DNA of 64,000 bases, from positions 62,001 to 126,000 of the IMG/VR virus record IMGVR_UViG_3300022839_000006; one strand, 5' to 3'. Positions 31,055 through 63,688 of the stretch are shown here, one piece after another. The notes under the pieces are model-generated. The model did not search any database. It was not told where the DNA came from and was given only the letters and a program-made list of their open reading frames with translations. How positions within the stretch are numbered: the first letter of the stretch is position 1; each line of letters begins with the position of its first letter. A program made the position numbers and the translations under genes.

Positions 31055-31942
31055 TCACAAGTGCAAATTTTCATAAAGTTCTTCTATGAAGATCGTTTTT
31101 ATCTCGCCTGTTTCTTTGTCTCTTATGGTGATTTGAGTGTTGCCCTTCACGCAGCAATATTCTTGCGCAAACTTGTCTTGGTCGTGATCAAGAGCTTCGA
31201 GAGTTTCCTGTTTCCAAGCTTCACCTCTGCCTGGGACATCATTCCACATAACACGTACAAACTCATATCCGTTGGTGCCTTCCTCTGCACCTTTACAGGT
31301 TTTCCAATAGTGGTTAATGCCATTTGGAGTTGAAGTCATTAATAATTTTGTTGTCTCGCCGGACGAAATTGTAGGATAAACAGAGGCGAAGAATTCATCG
31401 TACCCTTCGATAAACGCGACCTCGTCGAGATACAGAAACGAGATTGACTTGCCTCGAATTGCACTTGATGACGTAGTGCCTGCATATATCTTACAACCGT
31501 TTTCTAATTCTATAGAGCCTTTGTTCCACTCCTCTACGCCTTGCTGTAGCCACCTAGGGAGCGCCTCGTACGCAAGCTGAATTCTATTGAGAACTTCTCT
31601 TGCAGAGTCACCTTTATTTGCAAGGATTGCTGCTGTCTTATATTCGTTAAATAGAATATAGTGTAGAATCACGGCTGCGGCAGTTGTGGTTTTGCCACTT
31701 TGCCTTGCTGTCAACACCGCAACTCTTCTATTATCTGTAATTTTACGGACAATTTCCTCTTGGTAACCGTACATTTCAAACGGTATAAGCCCTTTGTCTA
31801 CGTGCACAATTTTTATATATGTCTTGGCAAAATATACCGGATCGTTGGCACATTTCATGTACTCTTGTAGTAATTCCGGCGTCCATTCAATTGCGGTACC
31901 AGACTTCTTGAGGTGTTGGTTTCCAAGATAACCTTCTGTCAT
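31055..31942 (-). CDS. gp17: terminase large subunit N-extein (ATPase domain) plus IntN
   Basis: YLGN..LK, RQSGKTT Walker A, YLDE.AF Walker B, STPNG. Confidence 0.96.
   Translation of the reverse strand: MTEGYLGNQHLKKSGTAIEWTPELLQEYMKCANDPVYFAKTYIKIVHVDKGLIPFEMYGYQEEIVRKITDNRRVAVLTARQSGKTTTAAAVILHYILFNEYKTAAILANKGDSAREVLNRIQLAYEALPRWLQQGVEEWNKGSIELENGCKIYAGTTSSSAIRGKSISFLYLDEVAFIEGYDEFFASVYPTISSGETTKLLMTSTPNGINHYWKTCKGAEEGTNGYEFVRVMWNDVPGRGEAWKQETLEALDHDQDKFAQEYCCVKGNTQITIRDKETGEIKTIFIEELYENLHL
31058..31153 (-). mobile_element. split intein N-fragment (32 aa)
   Basis: Block A CVKGNTQITIRD...IEELY directly after extein FAQEYC, then stop. Confidence 0.9.
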
Positions 31943-36150: not shown

Positions 36151-36720
36151 TTATGTCGCTGAAGCATCTAGAAACAGCACTTGATCTTCCTTATAGTATT
36201 CAAGTAACACTTCAATAAAAGCGGGATCTGAAAGCAACTCATTAACATAAGGCTCGACTTTGAGCTTATGTTCATTTTCTATTGTAGAGTTGTATTTTTT
36301 CACGTCATTGATGCCCAATGCTTTAGATATATTGAGTTTGAAGTTTTTATCCATCGCAATGTATGTTGGGTTGGTAAGGTCTCTACAGAAATATGAAAGT
36401 GGCTGGTGATGAAGGTCGCCTATTGATTTGAAGTTCTTCCAATTTTTCCTTTCAAACCAAGCAGCAAAATTGTCAAATTTAAAGTTGTTATATTGCAAAT
36501 GGTGGTAGCAGACTTCAATAGTAGAACCTTTCCACCTTTCCACCACATCTCGAACAACAATTATTGCTTCATAATCGTATATTGAATCTCTTATATAATT
36601 GCCATTTTTCCAACCCATTCTCATTAGATCGTGCGAAACGCTTTTGGATGCATTCTTAGGTATATCTAACCACATCTTCCTTTCAGTGTGGTTAAGATAG
36701 CAATTGCCTGGAAAGTTCAT
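36151..36720 (-). CDS. sulfotransferase (Sulfotransfer_2-like)
   Basis: 5'-PSB-like IPKNASKS, 3'-PB-like VRD..ERW.GS, H..P..Y, terminal YY.ED. Confidence 0.72.
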   Translation of the reverse strand: MNFPGNCYLNHTERKMWLDIPKNASKSVSHDLMRMGWKNGNYIRDSIYDYEAIIVVRDVVERWKGSTIEVCYHHLQYNNFKFDNFAAWFERKNWKNFKSIGDLHHQPLSYFCRDLTNPTYIAMDKNFKLNISKALGINDVKKYNSTIENEHKLKVEPYVNELLSDPAFIEVLLEYYKEDQVLFLDASAT

Positions 36721-37424
36721 AACCCGAAGTTAGCCTTTACTGAATCGTGAACTGCGATGTAATCTGGACCAATAAAATCTTCGTCGGTCAGACTATACTC
36801 GTGGAACTCAACGTTGTCTGGTTTCAGCTTTCCTAATGTAAAACCAAGTGGTTGTAGGAACTTATAACTATCAATCAACATCCATTTAGTCAACACACAT
36901 ATAAAACTATATTCAAACTGTATTACTTTTACTTTTCCTTCTTTGAGTGTATTTTCAAACCCTTTAAACACTTTACCTTCAGCACCTTCAGTGTCAATTT
37001 TTAGATAATCAATTTGCTGAATTTGTCTACTTTCAACATACTGATCGCCTGTCATTGTGAGGCCTGTTCTGATCTCGCTATCATCAAGTTGCAAGTCAAG
37101 AATTGAAGTGCTGAGTGCGTCATAAGAAGCTTTATATCTCATGGGGATTGAGCCAGCGGAATCAGACAAACCGAAACTGTTTGGGATCATCTTGTCGTCG
37201 AGTTCAATGTTGGAAAGCATTCTTCGGTATGTATCTGGTATTACCTCGAACATATGAATATCAGCGTCCGCTTGATATTGTCTTGTCATGTTAGTCCACT
37301 CGCCGATATTTGAACCAACGTCAAAAATGGTTTTAAACTGATTTTTAAATCTTTCTTGGATCCAAGTCTCGCCGTGCTCTTGAAATTCTCTCGTTGCGTA
37401 GGATCTATCGTATACGTGTGTCAT
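36717..37424 (-). CDS. FkbM-family SAM methyltransferase
   Basis: IFDVGSNIGEW, FE..P, IDYLKIDTEGAE..V..G, IQFEY. Confidence 0.92.
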   Translation of the reverse strand: MTHVYDRSYATREFQEHGETWIQERFKNQFKTIFDVGSNIGEWTNMTRQYQADADIHMFEVIPDTYRRMLSNIELDDKMIPNSFGLSDSAGSIPMRYKASYDALSTSILDLQLDDSEIRTGLTMTGDQYVESRQIQQIDYLKIDTEGAEGKVFKGFENTLKEGKVKVIQFEYSFICVLTKWMLIDSYKFLQPLGFTLGKLKPDNVEFHEYSLTDEDFIGPDYIAVHDSVKANFGL

Positions 37425-40175: not shown

Positions 40176-41936
40176 TTATTTATCCTTGCTCAATTTCCTT
40201 ACCGCGTCAACCAATATTGCAATCAGAGGTATGTAAGAGACCGACTTGACACCATTTTCGTTTGTTGTTACTAAATCTGGCACAATCTGCTCTAGTTCTT
40301 GTGCAATAACACCGTAGCTTTTCTTCTTGTTGTCTTTCCAATTAAAGGAGTATGTGCCAATTTGATTAATAATACCAAGACTGTCTATATCAGAATTGAA
40401 ATTCTCTTTATAATTTGCATCAGATAGAGAGTTAAATTCAGTAGCATTTAATGTGCCAGTTGAAGGATTAAAATACAATTTATCTGAAGCAACGTATACT
40501 ACCTGCGCAACTCCGCTACTAGATCCAACGAAACCTAAAAATCTGGTTGCATCAGTAGTTTCGTTGGTTATAGTAATACTTGAACCTTCTGCAGCAGGAC
40601 CTTGACTTCCGGTAAATCCTAAGTCACCTTTGGATCCGGTAAATCCTGCCCCTTGTGAGCCGACATAGCCAGTGTCACCTTTGGATCCGGTAAATCCTAC
40701 GTCACCTTTGGATCCAGTAAACCCAGCTGTGCCTTGACTTCCAGTAAAACCAAAGTCTCCCTTGGAACCAACAAAGCCAGTATCACCTCGACTGCCAGTG
40801 TAACCAATTGAACCTGCATAGCCTAGGTCACCTTTGGATCCAACAAAACCAGTAAATCCTAGTGACCCGGTGTAACCAATTGAACCAGCATAACCCAAAT
40901 CGCCTTTGGACCCAGCATATCCTACGTCACCTTGCGATCCAGAATAACCCAAAACACCTTTACTGCCAGTAAATCCAAAAGATCCAGTGTATCCTACATC
41001 GCCTTTGGATCCAGAATAACCAGTTGTACCTTGACTTCCGACATAACCAATTGAACCAGCATAACCCAAATCACCTTTGGATCCATCAAAACCAGTTGTA
41101 CCTTGGCTACCGACATAACCAATCGAACCGACATAACCCAAATCGCCTTTGGATCCATCAAAACCAGTTGTACCTTGGCTACCAGTAAATCCTTGCGACC
41201 CAGTGTAACCAATCGAACCGACATAACCCAAATCGCCTTTGGATCCATCAAAACCAGTTGTACCTTGGCTACCAGTAAATCCTGCCCCTTGGGAACCAGC
41301 ATAACCCAAATCGCCTTTGGACCCATCAAAACCAGTTGTACCTTGGCTACCAGTAAATCCTAGCGACCCAGTGTAACCAATCGACCCAGTAAACCCTAGT
41401 TGGCCGCGCGACCCAGAAAAGCCTATCAAGCCCTGTGATCCTGCGAAACCTATACTGCCCTGTGATCCTGCGAAACCTATACTGCCCTGCGAACCCGCGT
41501 ATCCCCGAGAACCTATATCGCCTTTCGAACCTGTGAAGCCGAGAGGACCTGTGAAGCCAGTCTCGCCTTTTGAGCCTGTAAAGCCAACAGAGGCGGCCTC
41601 TCCTGCTACACCTTGAATGCCTTGGGACCCAGAAAAGCCTAACGAACCAGTGTAACCCAGTTCGCCTTGGGATCCTGCAAAGCCAAGTGATCCAGTAAAG
41701 CCGAGAGAACCTGTGAAGCCTATCTCGCCTTTTGAGCCTGTATAGCCAACAGCAGCATATGCGCCCGCTACACCTTGAGATCCAGTAAAACCTCTACTAC
41801 CAGAAAAGCCACTGTTGCCTTTAGATCCGTCAAAGCCGCTGGTGCCCTGTGAACCTGTGTACCCTCTATTTCCTACAGTATTTACTGCTATTCTAGGACC
41901 TACGGTGGTGCTAGGTATCACGATTAAATCGCTCAA
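40176..41936 (-). CDS. collagen-like fibre protein with C-terminal S74 intramolecular chaperone
   Basis: Long (G-F/Y-T/A/V/S/D-G-S-X)n run; SD..YKEN, YGVIAQELE..VP.LV, V.Y..L. Confidence 0.88.
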   Translation of the reverse strand: MSDLIVIPSTTVGPRIAVNTVGNRGYTGSQGTSGFDGSKGNSGFSGSRGFTGSQGVAGAYAAVGYTGSKGEIGFTGSLGFTGSLGFAGSQGELGYTGSLGFSGSQGIQGVAGEAASVGFTGSKGETGFTGPLGFTGSKGDIGSRGYAGSQGSIGFAGSQGSIGFAGSQGLIGFSGSRGQLGFTGSIGYTGSLGFTGSQGTTGFDGSKGDLGYAGSQGAGFTGSQGTTGFDGSKGDLGYVGSIGYTGSQGFTGSQGTTGFDGSKGDLGYVGSIGYVGSQGTTGFDGSKGDLGYAGSIGYVGSQGTTGYSGSKGDVGYTGSFGFTGSKGVLGYSGSQGDVGYAGSKGDLGYAGSIGYTGSLGFTGFVGSKGDLGYAGSIGYTGSRGDTGFVGSKGDFGFTGSQGTAGFTGSKGDVGFTGSKGDTGYVGSQGAGFTGSKGDLGFTGSQGPAAEGSSITITNETTDATRFLGFVGSSSGVAQVVYVASDKLYFNPSTGTLNATEFNSLSDANYKENFNSDIDSLGIINQIGTYSFNWKDNKKKSYGVIAQELEQIVPDLVTTNENGVKSVSYIPLIAILVDAVRKLSKDK

Positions 41937-42593: not shown

Positions 42594-42851
42594 TTACAAA
42601 AGATAATTTACTGTGTCTGGATCAGTCCAGTTGGGATTCAGCGTAAAGTCTGTGCCGTCATAAAAGTACTTGCCACCTGTCCAATCTTCCGGGCCAGTGA
42701 CACCTTCATGTAAGACTGTGTCCTCACTGCGGCAGTCACCGATGATAAACTCGGCAGGATCACCAACAGTAATTTTGTCAGCTTCGATCAGCAGTGGTTT
42801 GTCATCTTCAAATAGGTAGAGGGACAGGTTGTCTTTGGTGAGCGTTTTCAT
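42594..42851 (-). CDS. small fibre-associated protein (possible assembly chaperone)
   Basis: V..P.DW.G.KY.YDG..F.LNP.W pattern; directly after the propeller gene. Confidence 0.7.
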   Translation of the reverse strand: MKTLTKDNLSLYLFEDDKPLLIEADKITVGDPAEFIIGDCRSEDTVLHEGVTGPEDWTGGKYFYDGTDFTLNPNWTDPDTVNYLL

Positions 42852-42857
42852 TTGTGT

Positions 42858-44468
42858 TTATCCTTTTATAATGATTTTAGTGGTGGCTACAGCAACCCCT
42901 GCATAGACATTTGGGTTGCCTGGAGTTTGAGCTAAGGCGCCGGTACCGGTCACGAAGTATTGCTGCGCCGTTACCAAGCCTGACTGTGACTCATTTACCG
43001 AACCGCCAATTTGCACAGTAGCTGTGGCAGCATCAGCGTAGGCTCCAGCAGAAAAGCCAATGTAGTTCTCAGTGGTCAGATTTGTTCCTACAGCGTCTAG
43101 GCTATCAATTGAAATAGCAGTACCGAAGTTAGAGTTGCCGAAGTCTCTGTAAGCAATGGCAACTTTGTTTGAGTTGCTGTCAAAAGTTGCCAAGGGGGTG
43201 AAGGTACTTGCACTTTCAAACACGACAGGAGTGCCAAAGCTGATTGAAGTCCCACTGACAGTCCCTACAACGGCAGTGCCGAAGCCAGAGTTGGCTTCGT
43301 CTCTATAGGCAATGACGACCTTGTTGTTGAAACTGTCAAAAGTGATTGTGATGTTGGTGGTATCGGCACTTGCAAACACGACAGTAGTACCAAAGCTAAT
43401 TGAAGTTCCACTGACAGTACCTACTCTGGCAGTGCCGAAGCTGGAGCTGCCTCTATAGGCAATGACGACCTTGTTGTTGAAACTGTCAAAAGTGGCTGAG
43501 ATATGGTATGTGTATGCACTATTGAACACGACAGCAGTGCCAAAGCTGATTGAGGTTCCACTGACAGTACCTACTACAGCAGTGCCGAAGCCAGAGTTGC
43601 CGCTGTCTCTATAAGCAATGACGACTTTGTTTGAGTTGCTGTCAAAAGTGGCTGAGATAAGGGCGGTATTTGCACTTTCAAACACGACAGGAGTGCCGAA
43701 GCTAATTGAAGTTCCACTGACAGTACCTACTCTGGCAGTGCCGAAGCTGGAGTTGCCGGCGTCTGAATAAGCAATGACAACCTTATTGTTGGAACTGTCA
43801 AAGGTGGCTGAGATGTTGGTAGCATTTGCACTCTCGAACACGACATGAGTGCCGAAGCTGATTGAAGTCCCACTGACAGTTCCTACAACGGCAGTGCCGA
43901 ATTGAGAGTTGCCGTTGTCTCTATAAGCAATGACGACCTTGTTTGAGTTGCTGTCAAAGGTGGCCGCGGTATAGGTGGCACTTGCACTCTCGAACACGAC
44001 AGGAGTGCCGAAGCTGATTGAGGTTCCGCTGACAGTACCTACAACGGCAGTGCCGAAGCCGGAGTTGCCGTAGTCTGTATAAGCAACGACAACCTTATTG
44101 TTGAAACTGTCAAAAGTGGCTGACATCCAGTCGGTAGTTGCACTATTGAACACGACAGCTTCAGAAGAACTAAGACCAACCGCACTCACAGTACCATCTG
44201 CGTTAATAACTACAGGCACGCCATTTGGCAGTGTACCAGAGGCGATTGCTTGCAATGTCGGACCGGTCGATCCGCCAATTGATCCCCACTCAACCCCACC
44301 AAATCCTTCAAATGTAGCGGCTGTGCTGTTGTATCTTAGTTGTCCAATGACGCCCACAGGTCTTTCAAGATCAGTACCTACTGGAACCTTAATTGCAGTG
44401 GTTCCTGCTAAATCTATGTATGCAGTCTGATCGTTTATGATCGTGGTGCCTTGTATTTTGATTGCCAT
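42858..44468 (-). CDS. putative receptor-binding protein A, 7 x 52-aa repeat beta-propeller
   Basis: N-terminal P.GT..ERP....GQLRYN....FEG fibre motif; seven SATFDS.NNKVVIAY..GNS.FGTAVVGTVSGTSISFGT repeats. Confidence 0.8.
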   Translation of the reverse strand: MAIKIQGTTIINDQTAYIDLAGTTAIKVPVGTDLERPVGVIGQLRYNSTAATFEGFGGVEWGSIGGSTGPTLQAIASGTLPNGVPVVINADGTVSAVGLSSSEAVVFNSATTDWMSATFDSFNNKVVVAYTDYGNSGFGTAVVGTVSGTSISFGTPVVFESASATYTAATFDSNSNKVVIAYRDNGNSQFGTAVVGTVSGTSISFGTHVVFESANATNISATFDSSNNKVVIAYSDAGNSSFGTARVGTVSGTSISFGTPVVFESANTALISATFDSNSNKVVIAYRDSGNSGFGTAVVGTVSGTSISFGTAVVFNSAYTYHISATFDSFNNKVVIAYRGSSSFGTARVGTVSGTSISFGTTVVFASADTTNITITFDSFNNKVVIAYRDEANSGFGTAVVGTVSGTSISFGTPVVFESASTFTPLATFDSNSNKVAIAYRDFGNSNFGTAISIDSLDAVGTNLTTENYIGFSAGAYADAATATVQIGGSVNESQSGLVTAQQYFVTGTGALAQTPGNPNVYAGVAVATTKIIIKG

Positions 44469-44559
44469 CTTCGCTTCCCCTTGTGGATACTCGGCTATTA
44501 TTTGTAATTTTCACTATAATCATTATATGTATTGTATTTTCGTACTTCAGTGTTACTTG

Positions 44560-44567
44560 TATTTATA
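44560..44567 (-). promoter_or_regulatory. T4-type late promoter TATAAATA
   Basis: Exact consensus upstream of propeller A. Confidence 0.75.
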
Positions 44568-44620
44568 AAGGATAGACATTTAATTGTGTGAGCAAAGTAC
44601 ACTTAAAATAGCATCACTGT

Positions 44621-44712
44621 CAGTGATTTTGTCACTTTCAATTAGTAGTGTCTTAGTGTCTTAGTGTCTTCAAAAGGTAGAGGGATAAATTATCTTTAGT
44701 AAGTGTTTTTAT
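44621..44712 (-). pseudogene. decayed copy of the 5' part of the 85-aa gene (42594-42851)
   Basis: Aligns by eye with ~42768-42851 (aggtagaggga, attttgtca); ATG changed to ATA; tcttagtg slippage repeat. Confidence 0.75.
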
Positions 44713-44717
44713 TTGGT

Positions 44718-46337
44718 TTATCTTTTCACTATGAGTTTTGTAGAGGATACAGCAACACCCGCATAGACTTCAGGGTTGCTCGGAGTTTCAGCTAAGGTGC
44801 CATTACCGGTCACGAAGTATTGCTGTCCGGCTGTCAAGCCTAATTGAACACCGTTGATCGCACCGATAAGCTGCACAGTAGCTGTGGTAGCATCAGCGTA
44901 GGCTCCAGCAGAAAAGCCAATATAGTTCTCAGTGGTCAGATTTGTTCCTGCAGCGCTTAGACTATCAATTGAAATAGCAGTGCCGAAGCCGGAGTTGCCG
45001 TCGTCTCTATAAGCAATGACAACCTTGTTTGAGTTACTGTCAAAGGTGGCTGAGATAAAGTAGGTAGTTGCACTTTCAAACACGACAGGAGTGCCGAAGC
45101 TGATTGAAGTCCCACTGACAGTCCCTACAACGGCAGTGCCGAAGCTGGAATTGCCCACGTCTCTATAAGCAATGACGACTTTGTTGTTGAAACTGTCAAA
45201 AGTGGCTGAGATCCGGTCGGTACCTGCACTCGCGAACACGACAGGAGTGCCGAAGCTGATTGAAGTCCCACTGACAGTTCCTACAATGGCAGTGCCGAAG
45301 TAAGAATTGCCGTTGTCTGAATAAGCAATGACGACCTTGTTTGAGTTGCTGTCAAAAGTGGCCGAGATGTAGTTGGCAGTTGCACTCTCGAACACGACAG
45401 TAGTGCCGAAGCTGATTGAAGTCCCACTGACAGTTCCTACGACAGCAGTGCCGAAGCCAGAGTTGCCGTCGTCTCTATAAGCAATGACAACCTTGTTTGA
45501 GTTACTGTCAAAGGTGGCTGAGATAAAGTAGGTACTTGCACTCTCGAACACGACAGCAGTGCCGAAGCTGATTGAAGTCCCATTGACAGTTCCTACGACA
45601 GCAGTGCCGAATCGAGAGTTGTTGCCTTCGTCTCTATAAGCAATGACAACCTTATTGTTGAAACTGTCAAAGGTGGCCGAGATGTGGCTGGTAGTTGCAC
45701 TCTCGAACACGACAGTAGTGCCGAAGCTGATTGAAGTCCCACTGACAGTTCCTACGACAGCAGTGCCGAATCGAGAGTTGCCCACGTCTGTATAAGCAAT
45801 GACAACCTTATTGTTGAAACTGTCAAAAGTGGATAAGATGTAGTTGGTAGGTACACTCGCGAACACGACAGGAGTGCCGAAGCTGATTGAAGTCCCACTG
45901 ACAGTTCCTACGACAGCAGTGCCGAAGCCGGAGTTGTATGAGTCATAATAAGCAACGACAACCTTATTGTTGAAACTGTCAAAGGTGTCCGAGATCCAGC
46001 TGGTACCTGCACTCTCGAACACGACAGCTTCAGAAGAACTAAGACCAACCGCACTCACAGTACCATCTGCGTTAATAACTACAGGCACTCCATTTGGCAG
46101 TGTACCAGATGCAATTGCTTCTAATGTTGGGTTGGCCGATCCGCCAATTGATCCCCAGCCAGCCCCACCAAATCCTTCAAATGCAGCCGCGGTGCTGTTG
46201 TATCGTATCTGTCCAGTGACACCCGCAGGTCTTTCAAGATCAGCACCTACCGGAACCTTAATTGCAGTGGTTCCTGCTAAATCTATGTATGCAGTCTGAT
46301 CGTTTATGATCGTGGTGCCTTGTATTTTGATTGCCAT
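44718..46337 (-). CDS. putative receptor-binding protein B, 7 x 52-aa repeat beta-propeller (paralog of A)
   Basis: Same N-terminus MAIKIQGTTIINDQTAYIDLAGTTAIKVPVG and same repeat framework. Confidence 0.8.
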   Translation of the reverse strand: MAIKIQGTTIINDQTAYIDLAGTTAIKVPVGADLERPAGVTGQIRYNSTAAAFEGFGGAGWGSIGGSANPTLEAIASGTLPNGVPVVINADGTVSAVGLSSSEAVVFESAGTSWISDTFDSFNNKVVVAYYDSYNSGFGTAVVGTVSGTSISFGTPVVFASVPTNYILSTFDSFNNKVVIAYTDVGNSRFGTAVVGTVSGTSISFGTTVVFESATTSHISATFDSFNNKVVIAYRDEGNNSRFGTAVVGTVNGTSISFGTAVVFESASTYFISATFDSNSNKVVIAYRDDGNSGFGTAVVGTVSGTSISFGTTVVFESATANYISATFDSNSNKVVIAYSDNGNSYFGTAIVGTVSGTSISFGTPVVFASAGTDRISATFDSFNNKVVIAYRDVGNSSFGTAVVGTVSGTSISFGTPVVFESATTYFISATFDSNSNKVVIAYRDDGNSGFGTAISIDSLSAAGTNLTTENYIGFSAGAYADATTATVQLIGAINGVQLGLTAGQQYFVTGNGTLAETPSNPEVYAGVAVSSTKLIVKR

Positions 46338-46373: not shown

Positions 46374-47999
46374 CTATTTATACTTCGTGGTTTCTATATT
46401 CTCTACGCGATCTGACAGTGTTTTAAAGCCGTCAATTAAGATGGCAATTAAAGGAATGTAATTCACATACTTCTTACCGGATGTATTTGTCACCAATTCA
46501 GGCAGTATTTGCTCAAGTTGCTGAGCAATTACACCGTAGCTTCTAACACCAGTTTCTTTCCAATCGAATGATATTGTTTCAATGCTATTAAGTATTGCAT
46601 TTGAATTGTAGATTTTATTTGGGTTATCTTTAAGTGTAATATCAGAGAGTGAATTGAATTCAGTAGCGTTTAGTGTTCCAGTCGAAGGGTTGTAGAATAA
46701 TTTTGTAGATGAAACAAACAGATCATCCGTGGCACCAGAAGTATTGTTTACAAACGTAATGTATCTCGTGTTGTCAGTTGCAACATCATCAGTTATTACA
46801 AGATCTGCTCCAGCGCCAGCACTTCCAGTAAATCCAACATTTCCCTGCGAACCTGTGAAGCCATTTGAACCAGAATATCCACTAGAACCACTAAAGCCAT
46901 CTTCTCCTTTTGATCCGGCAAAGCCTTGTGGGCCGACATCACTTACATTAATAACCCCTGCCATACTTGCGTGTATAGAACACTGGTAATATAGAGTACT
47001 TGGGGCATTGTATGGCAATCTAACGATCACTATCCCATTTTCAGCGCCATTATTAGTAACACCGTCATTATATTGACTGCCAGTACCGGTTACTTGTGCT
47101 GTCTTAATGTAAAACGGATGTCCCGGAGCTGCGACGTTGAAAGCATACGTAAACCCACGAATGAGATTCAAGGTCGGCTGAGATGCACCGTCAATGATAT
47201 AATTCGAAGAACCATTATTAGTTACTGTATATTCTCTTCTGCCTTCTATTCCAGCTGATCCTGTAAAACCTTGTGAACCTGTGAAGCCAAAAGATCCAGC
47301 AAACCCAGTTTCACCTTGGGAACCGGAGTAACCCAAGGAACCAGTAAAACCTACATCTCCTTGTGAACCAGTAAACCCAGTATCAGCCGCTTCGCCCGCA
47401 ACACCTTGCGAACCAGAATACCCCATATCACCTTTAGACCCGTCAAAGCCAGTTGTGCCTCGACTGCCTGTAAAACCAAACGAGCCAGTAAAACCAACAA
47501 GGCCCTGTGAACCCGTGTAACCCAATTCACCTTGTACACCCTGCGAGCCAGTATACCCAAAAGAACCAGTATACCCTACATCTCCTTGAGAGCCAGTATA
47601 ACCTTGAGAGCCAGTATAGCCGACGAAGCCGCCCTGTCCAGTCGAACCAGTAAACCCTTTACTTCCGGAATAACCTCGCGAGCCTGCATAACCCAAATCT
47701 CCTTGAGAGCCAGTAAAGCCAAACGAACCAGTAAAACCAACAATACCCTGAGAACCCGTATATCCTTGGGATCCATCAAATCCTGTAATACCTTGAGAGC
47801 CAACAAATCCAGTTTCGCCTTGAGAGCCAGTATAACCTTGAGAACCTGTATAGCCTTGAGAACCCGTATAACCTATAGAAGCAGCTTCGCCGGGAACACC
47901 TTGTGAACCTACGAAGCCAGCGCCTTGACTTCCCGTAAAGCCCCGAGAACCGTCAAACCCCTTATATGAACCACTTATAAAACTACTTAAAACTGTCAT
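46374..47999 (-). CDS. collagen-like fibre protein with inserted cupredoxin-like domain and S74 chaperone
   Basis: GFTGSQ repeats; GHPF...LYYQCSIHASM; SDITLKDN, YGVIAQ. Confidence 0.85.
   Translation of the reverse strand: MTVLSSFISGSYKGFDGSRGFTGSQGAGFVGSQGVPGEAASIGYTGSQGYTGSQGYTGSQGETGFVGSQGITGFDGSQGYTGSQGIVGFTGSFGFTGSQGDLGYAGSRGYSGSKGFTGSTGQGGFVGYTGSQGYTGSQGDVGYTGSFGYTGSQGVQGELGYTGSQGLVGFTGSFGFTGSRGTTGFDGSKGDMGYSGSQGVAGEAADTGFTGSQGDVGFTGSLGYSGSQGETGFAGSFGFTGSQGFTGSAGIEGRREYTVTNNGSSNYIIDGASQPTLNLIRGFTYAFNVAAPGHPFYIKTAQVTGTGSQYNDGVTNNGAENGIVIVRLPYNAPSTLYYQCSIHASMAGVINVSDVGPQGFAGSKGEDGFSGSSGYSGSNGFTGSQGNVGFTGSAGAGADLVITDDVATDNTRYITFVNNTSGATDDLFVSSTKLFYNPSTGTLNATEFNSLSDITLKDNPNKIYNSNAILNSIETISFDWKETGVRSYGVIAQQLEQILPELVTNTSGKKYVNYIPLIAILIDGFKTLSDRVENIETTKYK
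46375..46382 (-). promoter_or_regulatory. T4-type late promoter TATAAATA
   Basis: Exact consensus overlapping the upstream stop, ahead of propeller B. Confidence 0.75.
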
Positions 48000-58046: not shown

Positions 58047-58223
58047 TTACCTATTCTCTAGTCTTATAACAGTTTCGCTCAATCTATTTATACACTCTGT
58101 CAAAGACTTCACTTCTAGTCTCAGATCTGTTAGTTCCTTTGCCCGATTTCTTTCTGCCTGGTACTTTTTTAATTCTTGTAGATTTGTTTCGACGATTGCT
58201 TTTGAAAAATTATCTCTTATCAT
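58047..58223 (-). CDS. small coiled-coil late protein (58 aa, not in ORF track)
   Basis: Read by eye: MIRDNFSKAIVETN...RLENR*; overlaps upstream stop; contains TATAAATA at 58085-58092. Confidence 0.7.
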   Translation of the reverse strand: MIRDNFSKAIVETNLQELKKYQAERNRAKELTDLRLEVKSLTECINRLSETVIRLENR

Positions 58224-61200
58224 TGGAAGGAAATCCCTCTATAATCTAGTACCTTTGGCACTCGAGCAACATCGTCCGAAAGTAAATCAATCCGAATCGA
58301 GAACGATCTAAACGAATAGTATGTGCCAGTGGAATTTGTATATGTTGTAATGCCAGCGAGTTTTTCTGTTTCTGGTATTTCAAATACAAATTCCTTATAA
58401 TCATTCACGTTTGATGTGCTAGAGAATAGTGTAGAACCTTCAATTTTGTCCAATTCGAACCATTCGTTGTTACGCAACGAAACAGGGTCATCGCCATTCT
58501 TTACTTTCAGGTAAACCTTAATGTCAGAACCTATCGGTCTGTATCCTGTGAGATACAATCTAAAGTCTTCTGCATCAAATCCTTCTTGTAATTCCACTCT
58601 TTTGGATATGTACTTAGAAGTAGTTTCGACAGTGTCTGTTATATTATAGACATATGCAAATATCTTGGCAGTTTCAATGTCAACAAGCGGGGTGGTTGTT
58701 GCAATGGAATCTTTCTCAAGTGTGAGAACTACACGCAAGTTCTTGTCGTTTGTGATATCATTTGATTTACTATAAACAACACAACCCTTTTCGTTGAATG
58801 CTTTTTTGTCTGCAAAGCTGAACTCACTTGTATAAGCAGCATTTCCAGGCGCAGCAGGGTCTATCGCCTTCACTGCAGTTCTAACATTCGTATTTGTGTC
58901 AGTTATTCTATTGACCATAGCCTGTATGTAGCTCAATTCAATGTTATCAACTGAAACAATTGAAGCAGTTGCTCCGCTATCAATGCCGTATATAATCCCA
59001 GCAGATGCAAATATTCTTGTGTCTCTTGCAGACGAATCTTCAAGAACTAAGAAGTCTGGCTTTCTGGTATTAAAATAATTGATTTTTCCTGCAACTACTG
59101 GTCTTGAATTTATGGTACCTGCAAACTTTGGAAGCTTGTCTACAATAATTTGGGTAGAATTTGTGACAGATACGACCCGCAGAAGATCTTTTTCTCCTGA
59201 AGTGTGTTCAACATACACATAATCGCCTGCGCTGTAATTATTTAGAGCAGAACCTGTAACTACATTTGTTGTTACGTTGAGAACTAACTGATATGTGGTA
59301 CCTGCCGCAGCAGTGAACACGTATGCAAGTTCGTTGTTAGCAAATCCACCTACAGTATTTTGAATGGAGAAGAATTCTGCGTTATCAGTTTCTAATTCGA
59401 CAGTACCCTGGTCAACATTGAAGTTGTAGCGATAAAGATCAAACCTGATATCCTCATCCTGATACGAGTTCCATGAGCGGTTGTTTGTCGACGTAAACAG
59501 AACACCGTCACCCCAATCCGAATTTACAGCAGTTCCTGTTAAGAGGTCAGTGCCTCCTACTTTCTGTGTAAAGATTAGGTAGTCTGGGTCTGCTGCGTCT
59601 GGCATTACAACTATTGCGTATTCTTTTTCGGTGTCTAGTCTTACAGGAGCCTCGAAGATTATAGAAGTTACGACTGATGCGTCATTGGATATGTTCACTT
59701 GGGATGCTCTTAGGTGTATCTTTGAAAAAGGAAGTATTTCAAAGCTAGGATATCCGTTTTCTACTTCTCTTATCATCACAGTAATGCCATTAGTGGCACT
59801 TTTTCTGCTAAAGTAAAGATCGAGTCTTCCTAGGTATAGGCAATCCGCCCCTTGTGTCATGGTATCTTTAACAAAGAAGGTCTGTGCGAGAGGATCTCTT
59901 GGTGGGTCGCGGTCATCTCTTTCGCTTCTTTGTATTACCGGTGGAACTGGCGGTATGTTTCTTATAGTAACCGAGTTTGTGGTCGTGACAGAGCGCGTGC
60001 TCTTAATGTCAAACTCTGGTTTTCTTGTAGACATCGTTAGCCCAGTTTTTTCAATGCTGAAGTTATATGCGTTGAATTTCAGTCTTCCTGCTGATGCAGC
60101 AGCGCTTTCTATATCTTCGAATGTGCCGACGTCTGCAATTACTAATTCTCTTTCGCCAATGATAAACGTATTGCCTGGGATTTTAAATATAGCAAACAAT
60201 TCTCCGTTACTGTTTGTTGTAACGGAGGTTCCAAATTTTCCTGCTCTACGGACTCTATCACCTGAAGTTGCTCCAGAGATATCACTGCGTAGCGTTCCAG
60301 GCGCAATGAAGTCATCTACAATTTTTTCGTCAAAGAAGAAGAAGTGTTGCGTGTTCGGTCTTAGACCATACATTTCGACAGAAAGCTCAATCGATTTGAT
60401 GTAAGGCTTGTATTGGAAATTGGTAACAAAGTCGCCTACAAATTCCTCTTGTGCAGGTCCACTAGCAACATTTAATTCTTTAAATATGTTTTTGAATGTG
60501 TCGGTTGTAGTAGTTGTAATCTGCCTACCTGCCGCAGCATTTCCAGTTTCAGACACCTTGTTCGTCGATTTGATCTTTTTCTTTTTCGAGGACGTGAGAG
60601 GCACGAATTCGCTTATTGCCTCAGCAAATTCAGCAAATGGCGACACAAGATCGATTGCGTATGTCTTTGGAGTCGTTACAGTGTCATACGCAACATCGTA
60701 TTCTGGGGTAAGGTAACCAGTGCCTTTGTAGCTATAGAAATTGCTTGTACAGGTTCTAACATTTGTTGCATACTGCTGTCTCAAAAACCGAACATACTGG
60801 TTTGAACTTAGCGTAGCAGTTTTGTTGTCTACATCAAACGATTGGGTATCAGTAAATCCTTTCACCTTCAAGTTCAAAGGGAATTGTCTAAAGCTTGGGT
60901 ATAGAGCATTTTCAGTAAAGTCAACAGAAGAGTTGAATGTGGGATCGCTGACGTCAGCAATTGACAGGTCGTTAAACGGATCCACTACGATTCCATTTTT
61001 AAATCTGTTCAAGCCGTTTTCATCTTGAATTAGCAAATCACGTGTTGCATTTTCTAGCGCAGTAAGCTGCGTGTAGTATGTGATTTGATCAAGTTGCGAA
61101 GAAATTTTATCAATGTCTTGCATAGTGTATGTTTTTGTAGTTTTTCTCGTGAGCTGCAACGTCTCGTTTCTGCGACCCAATCTTGCAGCAAGTTCAGAGG

Positions 61201-63688
61201 ACAGCAAAGGATATCCAGGAACTGTTATTTCAGCAATAATAGAATTTTCGCTCTTGTCAATTGCGTTGGCGGAATTGCCAGTAACGTCGCCAACAATATA
61301 TTTGAAGCGACCATAAGAGTTGCCCACAATATAATCTACTCTGCTTCCGTAGTATTCAATGTCAACAGAAGCGCTAGTATTAAATGCAGGAACCACGTGA
61401 TTTATGTCTATATCAAATAACTGTGTTGCGCTTGTTGGTAGAGAGACACCTGGTGCTAGCGTAGTAGCACCCCCAACAGTTGCGGAATAACTAGCAGTCG
61501 CTAGTCTATAAGGTCTAAAGTCTATTGACGATTTTAAATCAAAAACGTCTCCGTTTTCTGTCTCGAAATACGAGACGTATTCTTGGTCAATGTTAACATA
61601 GCTATCTACTGTAAAGAAGTTAATATCAGAGCTTACATCTACTTTGAATGTTCTTACTTTTATAGTCAACGCTGCGTTGTTAGCAGGTAAAGTGCGGCCA
61701 GGTATCTTTTCGATGTATGAGTGGTCATAGAAATTGTCTTTTTGGTTTTTTACTAAGCGGAAGCTACTAGTAAAATCTTTATTCGAAGAGTCTACTATGC
61801 TAATAATCTCAGCTACATCAGGGAGACCTAACGTATATTTTGATATGTCTGCATCTGTTTTGTATGTGGTTTTTACATACACATCAAGTAGTTGTTTCAC
61901 TCTTTGTTCAGCACTTGTAAGTTTTGCGTTATAATAAACTGTTACGTTTTGCGTGCCTGCAGATGTTGTAATAACAAGGTTGGATCCTACAATGGCAGTA
62001 TTTGTAATTGTCGAAGCAGTATTATTGTTACTTTGTATTACAAGAACATCTCTTAGTGTTTCCGCATCAAACACTTCATCGACCGCTGGTTCTACTGTTA
62101 TGGTACCAGCCGAAGAAGGTGCAACTTTACTTTTTCTAATGCTGAACGACATGTCTGAAAGTGATTTTACAAAAGATTTGTTTGCATCAAAGATTAGTTT
62201 TGATTCGGACGAATTGATGATTTTTGGCGTTATCTGAATTTGCCCATTAGTAGAACCTTCTTTCACGTAGCCAACATTTTCAAATGCTTGACCTGTGTTC
62301 ATACGAATGGCATATAGATATACCCTGTCTCTCGTGTAGTTTTTAACAATAGCGGAACCAATTGCAACAAGTGACGAGTTCAAAAGTGAAACGTTGGCCA
62401 TGGTGCCTATCGTGACACTACCAGTTGCTGCTATGACTTTACAGAAGCCGCCGTAATTGAAGTTTACTGGTTGGCTGTTAATGTCGAATGTTACAGTATT
62501 TGCATTTGGAACTTCGAATATTCTTTTTGAATCGTTTGCAATGCGATATCCTTTTGAATATGCGATTCCTTCGCCCATTTCAACAAAGAATGTGTCTGTT
62601 GCATCGTTCTTTACAATTTCAAATTGAAATTTGTTCTTCGTAAAGTCACCGTTTGTTTCGTACGTTCTACGTGCAAGCTCTTTAGCAATCGAATTAAATT
62701 CAGAGACGTTTCTTGTTTCGACTGCGTATCCATTTTCATATCTACGAAGAATGAAAAACTCAGCATCAGCTTCTGCTGCTACTGTATTCAGTGCAATCAA
62801 TCTTGGGACGAGTAGCAATCTGTCCGCACCGGGGGCGTTCTCGTTCGCTGAGCCGTTTGCGTTATCAAGCAGTGAAGTGTCCTGTTGGGAGTTAACGATT
62901 GACTCATCAACTGCGTAACCCACCGATGTGTTATTAGGCTGAATTGCAAAGGGGTCTTCTTCATCAACTTCAGACAAATATTTACTAACAATGACTGTTT
63001 GATCATCAACGAATAGGAAGTGCCCACGCTGGAACACAATACCTTCGGATGAGTTAAGACCGAACGACTTTCCGATTGGGCTAGAGAAACCTGCAACTGA
63101 AGTGCTTGCTACAATGCCGTTGTCTATAGTTGTTTCGCTCGATACGCCCTCGACAACTTGTGTTCTAAGGATGTATTCTCTTACTGAAAGTGAATCGTTA
63201 GGTTCATACACTTTCTTTTCAATGCCTTCTACTTCAACGGTGTTTAGATATACCATGAAGAACGTGTTAAGGTCTGGTGCTCTACTTTGAAAACCACTTG
63301 TTCCTTGAATAATAAGAGACTTGAGACCCGAACTGTCTTCTATCTCGAAGTAATATTCATCAACCGTGCCGTCAATCTGAACTACAGTACGCTCGATAAA
63401 ATCTTCTGGTCTTGCTCTTCCTCCACCACCAGCAAGTAGAATACTATCTACAACTTTTGCATATTGAAGGTTGCGAATCTCTGTGAATGTGCAGCCCTTA
63501 ATGATTGAACCTTCTTTATAGATATTCTCCCCAAACTGTTCAATTTGGTTTTGAAGCGTTGTTTGTAGCTGAGTCAATTCTCTCGCTTGAACCGCAAAGC
63601 CAGGCTTAAAAAGCACTCTATAATATTTGTTGGCAATATCATAGTCGTCAAAGTACGGTGCAATATTCAGATCTGTTTTGATACTCAT
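58220..63688 (-). CDS. large baseplate/structural protein (DUF4815/VrlC-like)
   Basis: LN..PYFDD, RVLFKPG..VQARELTQLQ..LQNQIE.FG, APGADR, RF.NG..VDPF, DPLAQTF. Confidence 0.9.
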   Translation of the reverse strand: MSIKTDLNIAPYFDDYDIANKYYRVLFKPGFAVQARELTQLQTTLQNQIEQFGENIYKEGSIIKGCTFTEIRNLQYAKVVDSILLAGGGGRARPEDFIERTVVQIDGTVDEYYFEIEDSSGLKSLIIQGTSGFQSRAPDLNTFFMVYLNTVEVEGIEKKVYEPNDSLSVREYILRTQVVEGVSSETTIDNGIVASTSVAGFSSPIGKSFGLNSSEGIVFQRGHFLFVDDQTVIVSKYLSEVDEEDPFAIQPNNTSVGYAVDESIVNSQQDTSLLDNANGSANENAPGADRLLLVPRLIALNTVAAEADAEFFILRRYENGYAVETRNVSEFNSIAKELARRTYETNGDFTKNKFQFEIVKNDATDTFFVEMGEGIAYSKGYRIANDSKRIFEVPNANTVTFDINSQPVNFNYGGFCKVIAATGSVTIGTMANVSLLNSSLVAIGSAIVKNYTRDRVYLYAIRMNTGQAFENVGYVKEGSTNGQIQITPKIINSSESKLIFDANKSFVKSLSDMSFSIRKSKVAPSSAGTITVEPAVDEVFDAETLRDVLVIQSNNNTASTITNTAIVGSNLVITTSAGTQNVTVYYNAKLTSAEQRVKQLLDVYVKTTYKTDADISKYTLGLPDVAEIISIVDSSNKDFTSSFRLVKNQKDNFYDHSYIEKIPGRTLPANNAALTIKVRTFKVDVSSDINFFTVDSYVNIDQEYVSYFETENGDVFDLKSSIDFRPYRLATASYSATVGGATTLAPGVSLPTSATQLFDIDINHVVPAFNTSASVDIEYYGSRVDYIVGNSYGRFKYIVGDVTGNSANAIDKSENSIIAEITVPGYPLLSSELAARLGRRNETLQLTRKTTKTYTMQDIDKISSQLDQITYYTQLTALENATRDLLIQDENGLNRFKNGIVVDPFNDLSIADVSDPTFNSSVDFTENALYPSFRQFPLNLKVKGFTDTQSFDVDNKTATLSSNQYVRFLRQQYATNVRTCTSNFYSYKGTGYLTPEYDVAYDTVTTPKTYAIDLVSPFAEFAEAISEFVPLTSSKKKKIKSTNKVSETGNAAAGRQITTTTTDTFKNIFKELNVASGPAQEEFVGDFVTNFQYKPYIKSIELSVEMYGLRPNTQHFFFFDEKIVDDFIAPGTLRSDISGATSGDRVRRAGKFGTSVTTNSNGELFAIFKIPGNTFIIGERELVIADVGTFEDIESAAASAGRLKFNAYNFSIEKTGLTMSTRKPEFDIKSTRSVTTTNSVTIRNIPPVPPVIQRSERDDRDPPRDPLAQTFFVKDTMTQGADCLYLGRLDLYFSRKSATNGITVMIREVENGYPSFEILPFSKIHLRASQVNISNDASVVTSIIFEAPVRLDTEKEYAIVVMPDAADPDYLIFTQKVGGTDLLTGTAVNSDWGDGVLFTSTNNRSWNSYQDEDIRFDLYRYNFNVDQGTVELETDNAEFFSIQNTVGGFANNELAYVFTAAAGTTYQLVLNVTTNVVTGSALNNYSAGDYVYVEHTSGEKDLLRVVSVTNSTQIIVDKLPKFAGTINSRPVVAGKINYFNTRKPDFLVLEDSSARDTRIFASAGIIYGIDSGATASIVSVDNIELSYIQAMVNRITDTNTNVRTAVKAIDPAAPGNAAYTSEFSFADKKAFNEKGCVVYSKSNDITNDKNLRVVLTLEKDSIATTTPLVDIETAKIFAYVYNITDTVETTSKYISKRVELQEGFDAEDFRLYLTGYRPIGSDIKVYLKVKNGDDPVSLRNNEWFELDKIEGSTLFSSTSNVNDYKEFVFEIPETEKLAGITTYTNSTGTYYSFRSFSIRIDLLSDDVARVPKVLDYRGISFQ

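What the first reader, a model, noticed from the sequence alone, without database searches (positions are those of the whole stretch)
42858..46337. Twin 7-bladed propeller genes with codon-level hypervariable loops (NNT/NNC pattern) on a near-identical DNA framework
Seen: two tandem paralogs each carry seven ~156-nt repeats with a nearly invariant framework at DNA level. Variation concentrates in two loops. In the loop after Ser-Ala (AGT GCA; GCC or GTA once each), the first variable codon ends in T in 13 of 14 blades (act, agt, aat, gat, ggt, cct; one tac). The third ends in C in 14 of 14 (gac, acc, gcc, tac, ttc, agc, aac; seven amino acids). The two variable codons in the D-x-G-N-S-x-F loop are also mostly NNC. 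Codon positions 1-2 change while the wobble base stays fixed, the opposite of neutral drift. Established: diversity-generating retroelements produce this pattern by mutating adenines in AAY codons; strong diversifying selection on recently amplified repeats can also produce it. Inference: an antibody-like receptor-binding scaffold diversified by blade shuffling or gene conversion among 14 cassettes, possibly with a mutagenic template elsewhere. No RT or template repeat is visible in this window.
Basis: partly seen in the sequence, partly recalled or inferred. Interest (0 to 1): 0.82.

Follow-up and report, generated by a model that had tools for sequence, protein, structure and literature searches.

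The report
Phage propeller fibre genes with hypervariable loops
Two neighbouring genes of a T4-like phage from a salt lake each encode a seven-bladed propeller, probably a host-recognition protein, whose blades are kept alike by DNA exchange while a few loop residues change very fast; no reverse-transcriptase mutator is involved.

Summary
Two minus-strand genes (44718-46337, 42858-44468) each carry seven repeats of about 156 nt. Loop codon 7 is NNT in 13/14 blades and codon 9 is NNC in 14/14; adding a sister phage gives 22/23 and 23/23.

The fixed wobble base is not special. In the two phages, 14 of 36 framework codon columns also have an invariant wobble. Across 83 related genes, loop wobble diversity tracks framework wobble diversity, while loop positions 1-2 are near saturation even in the youngest arrays. 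Other lineages fix a different wobble base.

A DGR is not supported:
- No blade copy lies outside the two genes in the window, and two framework k-mers occur nowhere else on the 208-kb contig.
- Every ORF of 280 aa or more in the window is accounted for, and none is a reverse transcriptase.
- Variation is not adenine-specific.
- Silent framework polymorphisms are shuffled among blades.

The best reading is a large, uncharacterised family of virion proteins (6,882 clusters). Each has an N-terminal structural module, a 7-bladed propeller and a conserved C-terminus, and usually a conserved ~80-aa gene just downstream. The genes lie in the tail-fibre island. They evolve by concerted evolution plus diversifying selection on about six loop positions per blade. 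The closest analogue is the fungal HET-D/E WD40 repeats.

The parts
44718..46337 (-). Upstream propeller gene U (539 aa): N-terminal module, 7 blades, C-terminal domain
   Evidence: ORF. AlphaFold model with 7 blades of 4 strands and pLDDT above 90 for residues 105-455. Foldseek hits to 7-bladed propellers.
42858..44468 (-). Downstream paralogue D (536 aa), same architecture. One blade is 2 codons shorter.
   Evidence: Framework wobble identity U vs D is 0.79 at the same blade position and 0.76 at different positions.
46026..46337 (-). N-terminal ~104-aa module of U, probably the part that attaches to the virion
   Evidence: PHROG matches: phrog_6005 'virion structural protein' (E = 3.5e-12) and a baseplate wedge family (3e-5). 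Amino-acid sequence identical to the sister phage over the first 88 codons. Poorly modelled, pLDDT below 50.
44973..46025 (-). Seven blades of U (each 52-53 codons). Hypervariable codons are 7, 9, 10 (first loop) and 27, 29, 34 (D-x-G-N-S-x-F loop) of each blade.
43113..44156 (-). Seven blades of D
44721..44975 (-). C-terminal ~85-aa domain of U, conserved across the family. Function unknown.
   Evidence: Family consensus. No significant Pfam hit; weak PHROG hit to phrog_4368, function unknown. Low pLDDT.
42594..42851 (-). 85-aa gene 6 nt downstream of D. Conserved partner of propeller genes and a candidate assembly chaperone or adaptor.
   Evidence: Homologues lie within about 10 nt downstream of a propeller gene in most of the 58 loci (of 78) that carry one. 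No Pfam or PHROG assignment. The distant homologue in Lentibacter phage ICBM2 is followed by an annotated tail assembly chaperone.
44603..44717 (-). Decayed copy of the start of the 85-aa gene, just after the stop of U. ATG has become ATA and an 8-nt repeat is inserted.
   Evidence: It shows that the duplicated unit was [propeller gene + small gene].

Best explanation
U and D are tandem paralogues of a very large, uncharacterised family of tailed-phage virion proteins. They most likely sit on the tail or baseplate as host-recognition (receptor-binding) proteins.

Each protein has three parts: an N-terminal structural module, a 7-bladed beta-propeller, and a conserved C-terminal domain. A conserved ~80-aa gene usually follows.

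Each blade has a strongly constrained framework and about six exposed positions in two loops. By canonical propeller topology, both loops should lie on the same face.

Diversity does not come from a mutator. It comes from two ordinary processes.
- Frequent homologous exchange (gene conversion or unequal crossing-over), probably in short tracts. It acts among the 14 blades, between the two genes and between co-infecting relatives. It keeps the framework alike and reshuffles existing loop variants.
- Diversifying selection, which retains amino-acid differences at the loop positions.

The NNT/NNC pattern is a by-product. All blades of this lineage share recent ancestry, so silent third positions are still mostly unchanged, while positions 1-2 of the loop codons have turned over many times.

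Shown: the anatomy, the fold, family-wide hypervariable columns, concerted evolution, excess amino-acid-changing differences, the absence of any blade copy that could serve as a DGR template repeat (TR), and non-adenine-specific variation.
Inferred: virion location, receptor binding, and loops on one face.
For: Fold. The AlphaFold model has 7 x 4 strands with high confidence. The best PDB matches are 7-bladed propellers (Ciao1 target-normalised TM 0.73, Sec12, integrin alpha) and 6-bladed sialidases, at 8-16% identity.

Context. The window is a T4-like cyanomyovirus-type genome with gp23, gp20, sheath, gp15, gp14 and PhoH. The genes lie between the DUF4815 giant protein and the gp14 neck gene, among collagen-like/S74 fibres and other tail-fibre genes. 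If the DUF4815 protein is the VrlC gene (my reading, untested), this is the 'host recognition cluster' of PMC7029224. The N-terminal module hits virion-structural PHROGs.

Family. There are 6,882 clusters at 50% identity. All Atlas neighbours by sequence features are viral. In 78 IMG/VR loci there are 145 propeller ORFs, mostly with 7 blades and often in tandem.

Concerted evolution. Framework wobble identity is 0.64 between different blades of one gene, against 0.45 between same-position blades of different genes. For U and D it is 0.80 and 0.74, against 0.39-0.40.

Shuffling.
- The sister phage L001 is 94-100% identical per 100-nt bin in the flanks but about 84% in the repeats.
- There is no positional orthology of blades between the two phages.
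- 15 framework polymorphisms are shared by the two phages.
- 528 of 741 site pairs show all four gametes, and linkage is lost within about 10 nt.

Selection. Framework pN/pS is 0.04. At columns 7 and 9 it is 4.6-7.3. Loop positions 1-2 have diversity of about 0.56 even in the youngest arrays, where framework wobble diversity is 0.19.

Wobble is ordinary. The Spearman correlation between loop wobble and framework wobble diversity is 0.79 over 83 genes. Invariance fractions are similar. Other lineages fix NNT instead of NNC at column 9.

No constant hypermutation. Identical propeller genes were recovered from 5 samples in one lineage and 3 samples in another.
Against: - No experiment or virion proteomics places the protein on the particle.
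- No cultured phage has a close homologue. The best is 29% identity, a hypothetical protein of Lentibacter phage ICBM2.
- All sequences are short-read metagenome assemblies of repeats, so some apparent mosaicism could be assembly chimerism. Independent Logan contigs break inside the arrays.
- pN at the loop codons is near saturation. pN/pS for the five-column set in the window is only 1.5, so part of the signal could be relaxed constraint.
- Gene conversion violates the assumptions of simple pN/pS comparisons.
Confidence: 0.7

Rival explanations
1. A diversity-generating retroelement, or another template-driven mutator, rewrites the loop codons from a template carrying AAT/AAC. This would give the NNT/NNC pattern.
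For: The position-wise consensus of columns 7 and 9 is AAT and AAC. NNT/NNC holds in 22/23 and 23/23 blades of two phages. About 144 kb of the genome outside the window was not screened for a reverse transcriptase.
Against: - No 15th blade copy is in the 64-kb window on either strand.
- Two framework k-mers occur only inside U and D on the whole 208,230-bp contig.
- No template-like copy was recognised in 637 kb of flanks of 78 related loci.
- Every ORF of 280 aa or more in the window is assigned to another function or is a fibre gene.
- 19 of 38 consensus-A positions are invariant, including AGT Ser just before the loop. Strongly variable sites fall on all four bases.
- C/T silent polymorphisms in the framework differ among blades and are shuffled. 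A single template cannot produce that.
- Column 10 varies at all three positions. A template adenine at its wobble would permit stop codons (the stop-codon point is my inference).
- The pattern is lineage-specific, not family-wide.
- Identical alleles recur across samples.
Confidence: 0.03
2. The loops are simply unconstrained. Variation there is neutral drift in surface loops of a structural or enzymatic propeller, with no diversifying selection and no recognition role.
For: pN/pS for the five hypervariable columns in the window is only 1.5, and it is about 1.0-1.2 for the semi-variable columns. The fold also resembles sialidases and lectins.
Against: - Loop positions 1-2 reach about 0.56 diversity in arrays whose silent framework sites are at 0.19.
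- Columns 7 and 9 give pN/pS of 4.6-7.3.
- Gene conversion that homogenises the neighbouring framework codons should also erase neutral loop differences, yet they persist.
- The same few columns are hypervariable in 742 distinct blades, and they alternate with conserved residues (columns 7, 9 and 27, 29) as expected for one exposed side of a strand.
- No sialidase, lectin or other enzyme family is detected by Pfam.
Confidence: 0.15
3. Much of the blade mosaicism, and part of the twin-gene structure, is an artefact of short-read metagenome assembly across near-identical repeats from co-occurring strains.
For: Independent Logan contigs of the likely source sample break repeatedly inside the arrays, and many pieces fit two places. 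The sister contig ends inside the second paralogue.
Against: - Both ORFs are intact, with exactly 7 blades as in 112 of 145 family ORFs.
- The same two-gene layout occurs in the sister contig and in many loci.
- 49 Logan pieces match the window at 99% or more.
- The family-wide statistics rest on 83 distinct genes from independent assemblies.
- Chimerism cannot create the column-specific codon pattern.
Confidence: 0.07

Closest known systems
Fungal HET-D/HET-E (HNWD/NWD) WD40 repeat domains of NOD-like receptors, i.e. repeats with 'high internal conservation' (Paoletti et al. 2007, PMC1805685; PMC2873952; PMC4986451)
   Same: Both are beta-propeller repeats kept near-identical by concerted evolution within and between paralogous genes. 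[quoted passage not shown] The same pattern is measured here.
   Different: The protein family is unrelated: no WD40 Pfam match, 52-aa blades, and no NACHT/NLR architecture. This is a phage virion-type protein, not a cellular immune receptor. No RIP-like process applies. Blade number is almost fixed at 7 (or 13-14), whereas the fungal repeat number is highly variable.
Phage receptor-binding proteins with propeller domains: Staphylococcus phage phi11 Gp45 (five-bladed, GlcNAc of teichoic acid), PRD1 P2, and PhiKZ gp131C (seven-bladed, PDB 4GBF), as reviewed in PMC4901313
   Same: All are phage proteins with a propeller at the host-facing periphery. Gp45 has the same three-part order: an N-terminal attachment stem, a propeller platform, and a C-terminal domain.
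   Different: There is no detectable sequence similarity to any PDB chain, and none of these is among the 50 best fold matches listed. No repeat homogenisation or hypervariable-loop pattern came up for those proteins in the passages I read. The oligomeric state here is unknown.
Diversity-generating retroelements (Bordetella phage BPP-1 Mtd/Brt)
   Same: Both serve rapid diversification of a phage host-recognition protein at a few codons on a fixed scaffold, and both give NNY-type codons.
   Different: No template repeat was found, no reverse transcriptase was found in the window, variation is not adenine-specific, and the fold is a propeller rather than a C-type-lectin fold. There are 14 variable units rather than one C-terminal variable region.

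Membership tests
Diversity-generating retroelement (DGR) | Template repeat (TR): a second, near-identical, non-coding or separate copy of the variable region | tested here: not met
   The nhmmer blade profile finds 14 copies and no 15th in the 64-kb window. Two framework k-mers occur only in U and D on the 208,230-bp contig. No template-like copy was recognised in the flanks of 78 related loci.
Diversity-generating retroelement (DGR) | Reverse transcriptase gene nearby | tested here: not met
   All ORFs of 280 aa or more in the window are assigned to other functions or are fibre genes. The remaining ~144 kb of the genome could not be read with these tools.
Diversity-generating retroelement (DGR) | Substitutions restricted to positions that are adenine in the template | tested here: not met
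   19 of 38 consensus-A positions are invariant. Strongly variable sites number A 13, C 7, G 8, T 11. C/T silent polymorphisms are present in the framework.
Diversity-generating retroelement (DGR) | Variable region at the C-terminus of a C-type-lectin or Ig-fold target, followed by an IMH element | tested here: not met
   The variable sites lie in 14 internal propeller blades. An IMH element was not searched for.
Beta-propeller fold (7-bladed) | Seven 4-stranded antiparallel sheets arranged around an axis | tested here: met
   The AlphaFold model has 7 repeats of 4 strands with pLDDT above 90. Foldseek probability is 1.00 to Ciao1, Sec12, integrin alpha and sialidases, with target-normalised TM up to 0.73.
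Named propeller sequence families (WD40, Kelch, FG-GAP, BNR/Asp-box, SGL) | Significant match to the family's Pfam model | tested here: not met
   No Pfam-A family matches either protein at E <= 0.01. Sporadic precomputed labels on homologues (PF18050, PF08450) are inconsistent.
Concertedly evolving hypervariable repeat propellers (fungal HNWD type), as a mode of evolution | Repeats within a gene or lineage are more alike at silent sites than positionally equivalent repeats of other genes | tested here: met
   0.64 against 0.45 family-wide. U 0.80 and D 0.74 against 0.39-0.40.
Concertedly evolving hypervariable repeat propellers (fungal HNWD type), as a mode of evolution | A few codons per repeat with an excess of non-synonymous change | tested here: met
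   pN/pS is 4.6-7.3 at columns 7 and 9, and 1.4-3.9 for the five hypervariable columns, against 0.04 in the framework. Loop positions 1-2 are near saturation in young arrays. The estimates are not recombination-aware.
Concertedly evolving hypervariable repeat propellers (fungal HNWD type), as a mode of evolution | Selected residues cluster on the interaction face of the propeller | not testable with these tools
   Model coordinates are not returned. Strand order places the columns 27-34 loop, and probably columns 7-10, on the same face. This is inference only.
Phage tail fibre / receptor-binding protein | Present in the virion at the tail or baseplate and binds a host surface receptor | not testable with these tools
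   Support is indirect only: position in the tail-fibre island, the N-terminal virion-structural PHROG match, the conserved small downstream gene, and the fibre-plus-chaperone context of the distant ICBM2 homologue.

The most novel reading that the evidence does not exclude
The 14 blades (and the up to 28 or more in relatives with three or four tandem genes) might work as a programmed cassette system. In that reading, a phage-encoded or host recombination function actively drives short-tract conversion among blades during each infection. A single burst would then contain many loop combinations. This would be a recombinational, RT-independent counterpart of DGRs, comparable to pilin or VlsE antigenic variation, but in a virus.
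Probability: 0.08. Interest if true: 0.85.

Novelty: new variant of a known kind. Interest (0 to 1): 0.55.

Why it matters
How uncultured aquatic phages recognise hosts is largely unknown, and most of their fibre genes have no annotation.

This family is very large (6,882 clusters at 50% identity) and is viral wherever its taxonomy is recorded. It has no close homologue (at most 29% identity) in about 50,000 deposited phage records. It still has a simple, predictable anatomy: a rigid propeller with about six variable positions per blade.

If it is a receptor-binding protein, the loop positions are a readable specificity code. Such a code could help link uncultured phages to hosts, and the propeller is a natural scaffold for engineered binders.

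It also shows that phages can diversify a recognition surface quickly without a retroelement, in the same way as fungal immune receptors. Finally, it is a caution for sequence scanning: an NNY pattern on a repeat framework is not in itself evidence of a DGR.

Tried and rejected
- Pfam on the whole proteins and on the N- and C-terminal pieces gave nothing significant.
- The PDB sequence search gave nothing.
- Megablast of the region against 50,697 phage records gave no match. tblastn found only three distant hits below 30% identity.
- Reads. Only Logan contigs, not raw reads, were available for the salt-lake runs. They are fragmented in the repeats, so within-population variation at the loop codons could not be measured. 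Differences across samples, over the whole 5-kb stretch, are ordinary transitions with no adenine bias.
- I considered amino-acid or codon-usage bias as the cause of NNT/NNC. I rejected it because the same amino acids use opposite wobble bases at the two columns, and the genome uses both.
- I considered whether loop wobbles are more conserved than framework wobbles, which would hint at a mechanism. I rejected it: they are invariant in 29-43% of young arrays, against 51% for framework wobbles.
- I considered in-situ point mutation since the split from the sister phage. I rejected it because silent framework sites in the repeats also differ (3-5 of 36 codons per blade) at polymorphisms shared by both phages, and blades show no positional orthology.
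- Literature searches found no description of this family.
- I did not screen the ORFs in the flanks of related loci for reverse transcriptase.
Full report
**What is there**

The finding covers two tandem genes on the minus strand: U (44718..46337, 539 aa) and D (42858..44468, 536 aa). Tandem Repeats Finder reports a 156-nt period with 6.7 copies in each. A DNA profile of the blades finds exactly 14 copies in the 64-kb window and nothing else on either strand.

Each protein has three parts. There is a ~104-aa N-terminal part, seven repeats of 50-53 aa, and a ~85-aa C-terminal part. The repeat framework reads VVFESA-x-T-x-x-ISATFDS-x-x-NKVVIAYRD-x-GNS-x-FGTAVVGTVSGTSISFGT.

- Column 7 is NNT in 13/14 blades and column 9 is NNC in 14/14, with seven amino acids each.
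- The preceding Ala codon is GCA 12, GTA 1, GCC 1.
- The two variable codons of the D-x-G-N-S-x-F loop are NNC in 8/13 and 11/14 blades.

This is not codon usage. The same residues (Asn, Asp, Ser, Thr, Phe, Tyr) take T-ending codons at column 7 and C-ending codons at column 9. With the sister phage included, Fisher p = 6e-12. Other long genes of the window use both endings freely.

**Genomic setting**

The window is a T4-like myovirus of the cyanomyovirus type. It carries the major capsid protein (about 72% nt identity to Synechococcus phage S-CAM7), portal, sheath, gp15, the gp14 neck protein, prohead protease, PhoH and a split large terminase. It is part of IMGVR_UViG_3300022839_000006, a 208,230-bp contig. 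The runs that hold it are salt-lake metagenomes.

U and D lie between the giant DUF4815 protein (58220..63688) and the gp14 neck gene. Around them are collagen-like fibres with S74 chaperone domains (40176..41936, 46374..47999), several other tail-fibre-like genes and a large glycosyltransferase. I take the DUF4815 protein to be the VrlC homologue; no call tested that. On that reading, this is the position of the 'host recognition cluster' described for T4-like marine myophages, between VrlC and gp14 (PMC7029224).

**Fold**

An AlphaFold2 model of U, built with 47 homologues, has pLDDT above 90 for residues 105-455, with seven repeats of four strands each. The N- and C-terminal parts are poorly modelled.

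Foldseek against the PDB returns generic propellers: Ciao1 WD40 (target-normalised TM 0.73), Sec12, integrin alpha and sialidases, at 8-16% identity. Against viral models it returns uncharacterised phage proteins. There is no Pfam family and no PDB sequence relative. So the propeller is confirmed, but it belongs to no named propeller family.

**Family**

An exhaustive HMMER search finds 6,882 clusters at 50% identity, of which 2,446 have E <= 1e-30. Lengths run from about 430 to 4,874 aa. All Atlas neighbours by sequence features are viral 'hypothetical proteins'.

Among 50,697 deposited phage records, only three hits below 30% identity exist. Two of them are records of one phage, Lentibacter phage ICBM2. 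There the homologue sits in a row of tail-protein and tail-assembly-chaperone pairs.

In 78 IMG/VR loci I found 145 propeller ORFs. 112 have 7 blades and a few have 13-14. Often two to four stand in tandem.

A homologue of the 85-aa ORF that follows D (42594..42851) occurs in 58 of the 78 loci. In most of them it lies within about 10 nt downstream of a propeller gene.

Just after the stop of U there is a decayed copy of the start of that small gene, with ATG changed to ATA and an 8-nt repeat inserted. The twin therefore arose by duplication of a [propeller + small gene] unit.

The N-terminal module matches virion-structural and baseplate PHROGs.

**Is the wobble pattern a mutational signature?**

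No. Four results bear on this.

First, within the 23 blades of the window and its sister phage, 14 of 36 framework codon columns also have an invariant third base. Of the five most variable codons, two have a fixed wobble (columns 7 and 9) and three do not (columns 10, 29, 34). That is the same proportion as in the framework.

Second, across 861 blades of the family, columns 7 and 9 use all four wobble bases.

Third, I compared 83 distinct genes.
- Wobble diversity of the loop codons tracks wobble diversity of the framework (Spearman 0.79).
- Diversity at loop positions 1-2 is already about 0.56 in the youngest arrays, where framework wobble diversity is 0.19. It hardly rises after that.
- In young arrays, loop wobbles are invariant in 29-43% of genes and framework wobbles in 51%.

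Fourth, other lineages show the same picture with a different fixed base. L003, L004 and L024 have NNT at column 9, while L010 and L058 have NNC.

So the third base is an ordinary silent site that still records the recent common ancestry of the blades. What is unusual is the speed of change at positions 1-2.

**Concerted evolution and shuffling**

At framework wobble sites, different blades of one gene are 0.64 identical. Blades at the same position in different genes are 0.45 identical, the same as blades at different positions. For U and D the within-gene values are 0.80 and 0.74, against 0.39-0.40 to other genes. U against D gives 0.79 (same position) and 0.76 (different positions). The 7-blade architecture is shared across the sampled family, so this is homogenisation rather than repeated re-amplification.

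A sister phage (L001, a 263,791-bp JGI contig with the same gene order) is mostly 94-100% identical to the window per 100-nt bin in the flanks. Inside the repeats it is only about 84% identical.
- Every blade carries different loops.
- No blade of U is closer to its positional counterpart than to other blades.
- Silent framework codons differ at 3-5 of 36 per blade.
- 15 framework polymorphisms are shared by both phages.

Among informative sites, 528 of 741 pairs show all four gametes, and linkage is lost within about 10 nt. U4 and U7 are 95% identical, which points to a recent internal conversion.

Together this indicates exchange of standing variation, probably in short tracts, among blades, between the two genes and between phages. 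It does not fit in-situ point mutation.

**Selection**

By Nei-Gojobori counting over all blade pairs:
- The framework has pS 0.26-0.29 and pN 0.01, a ratio of 0.04.
- Columns 7 and 9 have pN 0.55 and pS 0.08-0.12, a ratio of 4.6-7.3.
- The five-column hypervariable set has a ratio of 1.4-3.9.

The same columns (7, 9, 10, 27, 29, and then 11 and 33) have the highest entropy in 742 distinct blades. They alternate with conserved residues, as expected for one exposed side of a strand.

These estimates are crude, because the sites are near saturation and recombination is present. Still, loop differences persist next to framework codons that are being homogenised, and that argues for selection that maintains diversity.

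**DGR test**

- No extra blade copy is in the window.
- Two framework k-mers of 18 and 24 nt occur on the entire 208-kb contig only inside U and D.
- No template-like copy was recognised in 637 kb of flanks of related loci.
- Every ORF of 280 aa or more in the window is otherwise accounted for.
- Half of the consensus adenines are invariant, and variable sites fall on all four bases.
- C/T silent polymorphisms among blades cannot come from a single template.
- Identical propeller alleles were assembled from five samples in one lineage and three samples in another. This speaks against continuous hypermutation, though these are consensus assemblies.

The unscreened 144 kb of the genome is the only remaining gap.

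**Topology of the variable positions**

This part is inference. In the model each repeat has four strands: columns 1-16, 21-28, 34-43 and 46-49. With four antiparallel strands per blade, the loops at columns 29-33 and 50-54 lie on one face, and those at columns 17-20 and 44-45 on the other.

Columns 7-10 sit in the middle of the long first strand. I read this as the crossing from the outer edge to the central strand on the same face as the columns 27-34 loop. That is the usual ligand face of propellers.

**Comparison with known systems**

As a mode of evolution, this closely parallels the WD40 domains of the fungal het-d/het-e (HNWD) family. There, repeats evolve in concert within and between loci, units are reshuffled, and four codons per repeat on the interaction surface are under diversifying selection (PMC1805685). 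The proteins themselves are unrelated.

As a phage part, the nearest analogues are propeller-bearing receptor-binding proteins. These are phi11 Gp45 (with the same stem-propeller-C-terminal order), PRD1 P2 and PhiKZ gp131C (PMC4901313). None shows sequence similarity to U or D.

DGRs are the nearest functional analogue, but the defining features that could be tested were not met.

**Caveats**

All sequences are short-read assemblies of repeats. Independent Logan contigs from the likely source sample confirm many segments at 99% or more, but they break inside the arrays. Joints between equivalent N-terminal points of D and U in other samples may be copy-number variants or other strains. Virion location and receptor binding rest on context only.

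**Verdict**

The other half, a DGR-like mutator with the fixed wobble as its signature, does not hold.

The object is a new, very large and unstudied phage protein family. It uses a known evolutionary strategy in a setting where I found no description of it in the papers searched.

Noticed in passing
window 44603-44717 (-), with the 8-nt repeat TAGTGTCT x3 at 44646-44670: A decayed copy of the start of the 85-aa gene lies just after the stop of U. ATG has become ATA and an 8-nt tandem repeat is inserted. Contigs from other salt-lake samples carry 5-nt and 2-nt deletions in that repeat.
   Followed up: partly
window 42594-42851 (-); 58 related loci, e.g. L003:1567-1809 and L024:11253-11495: A ~80-aa gene with no family assignment occurs in 58 of 78 loci, in most of them within about 10 nt downstream of a propeller gene. 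It is a candidate dedicated chaperone or adaptor.
   Followed up: partly
window 29706-30851 and 31055-31942 (-): The large terminase subunit is split into two ORFs about 200 nt apart. This could be an intron, a frameshift or an assembly error. I did not examine it.
   Followed up: no
window 19694-21154 (+): A 486-aa HNH/homing-endonuclease-like gene (phrog_3339, E = 6e-105) abuts the 3' end of the major capsid gene on the opposite strand.
   Followed up: no
window 44266/46134 and 46138/44268 (contig joints in runs X4 and X3): Contigs from other samples join equivalent N-terminal points of D and U, skipping 1867 nt or going back 1871 nt. This is what unequal crossing-over between the paralogues would give (one-gene or three-gene variants). 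They could also come from other strains.
   Followed up: no
L019:443-4754; L044:789-7627; L050:4258 onward: Relatives carry three or four tandem propeller genes, some overlapping by 16 nt, and some have 13-14-blade double propellers. Homologous domains also occur inside giant proteins of up to 4,874 aa.
   Followed up: partly
window 40176-41936 and 46374-47999 (-): Collagen-like (G-x-x triplet) fibre genes with C-terminal S74 chaperone domains flank the propeller pair. They carry their own internal tandem repeats (periods 18, 27, 72-168 nt), so they may evolve by similar repeat dynamics.
   Followed up: no
window 36717-40141 (-): A 905-aa multi-domain glycosyltransferase and an FkbM-type methyltransferase sit inside the tail-fibre island, as reported for the host-recognition clusters of marine T4-like phages.
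   Followed up: no
L001:11866-12390: The 263,791-bp sister contig ends inside the second propeller paralogue. The repeat array is probably what broke that assembly.
   Followed up: no
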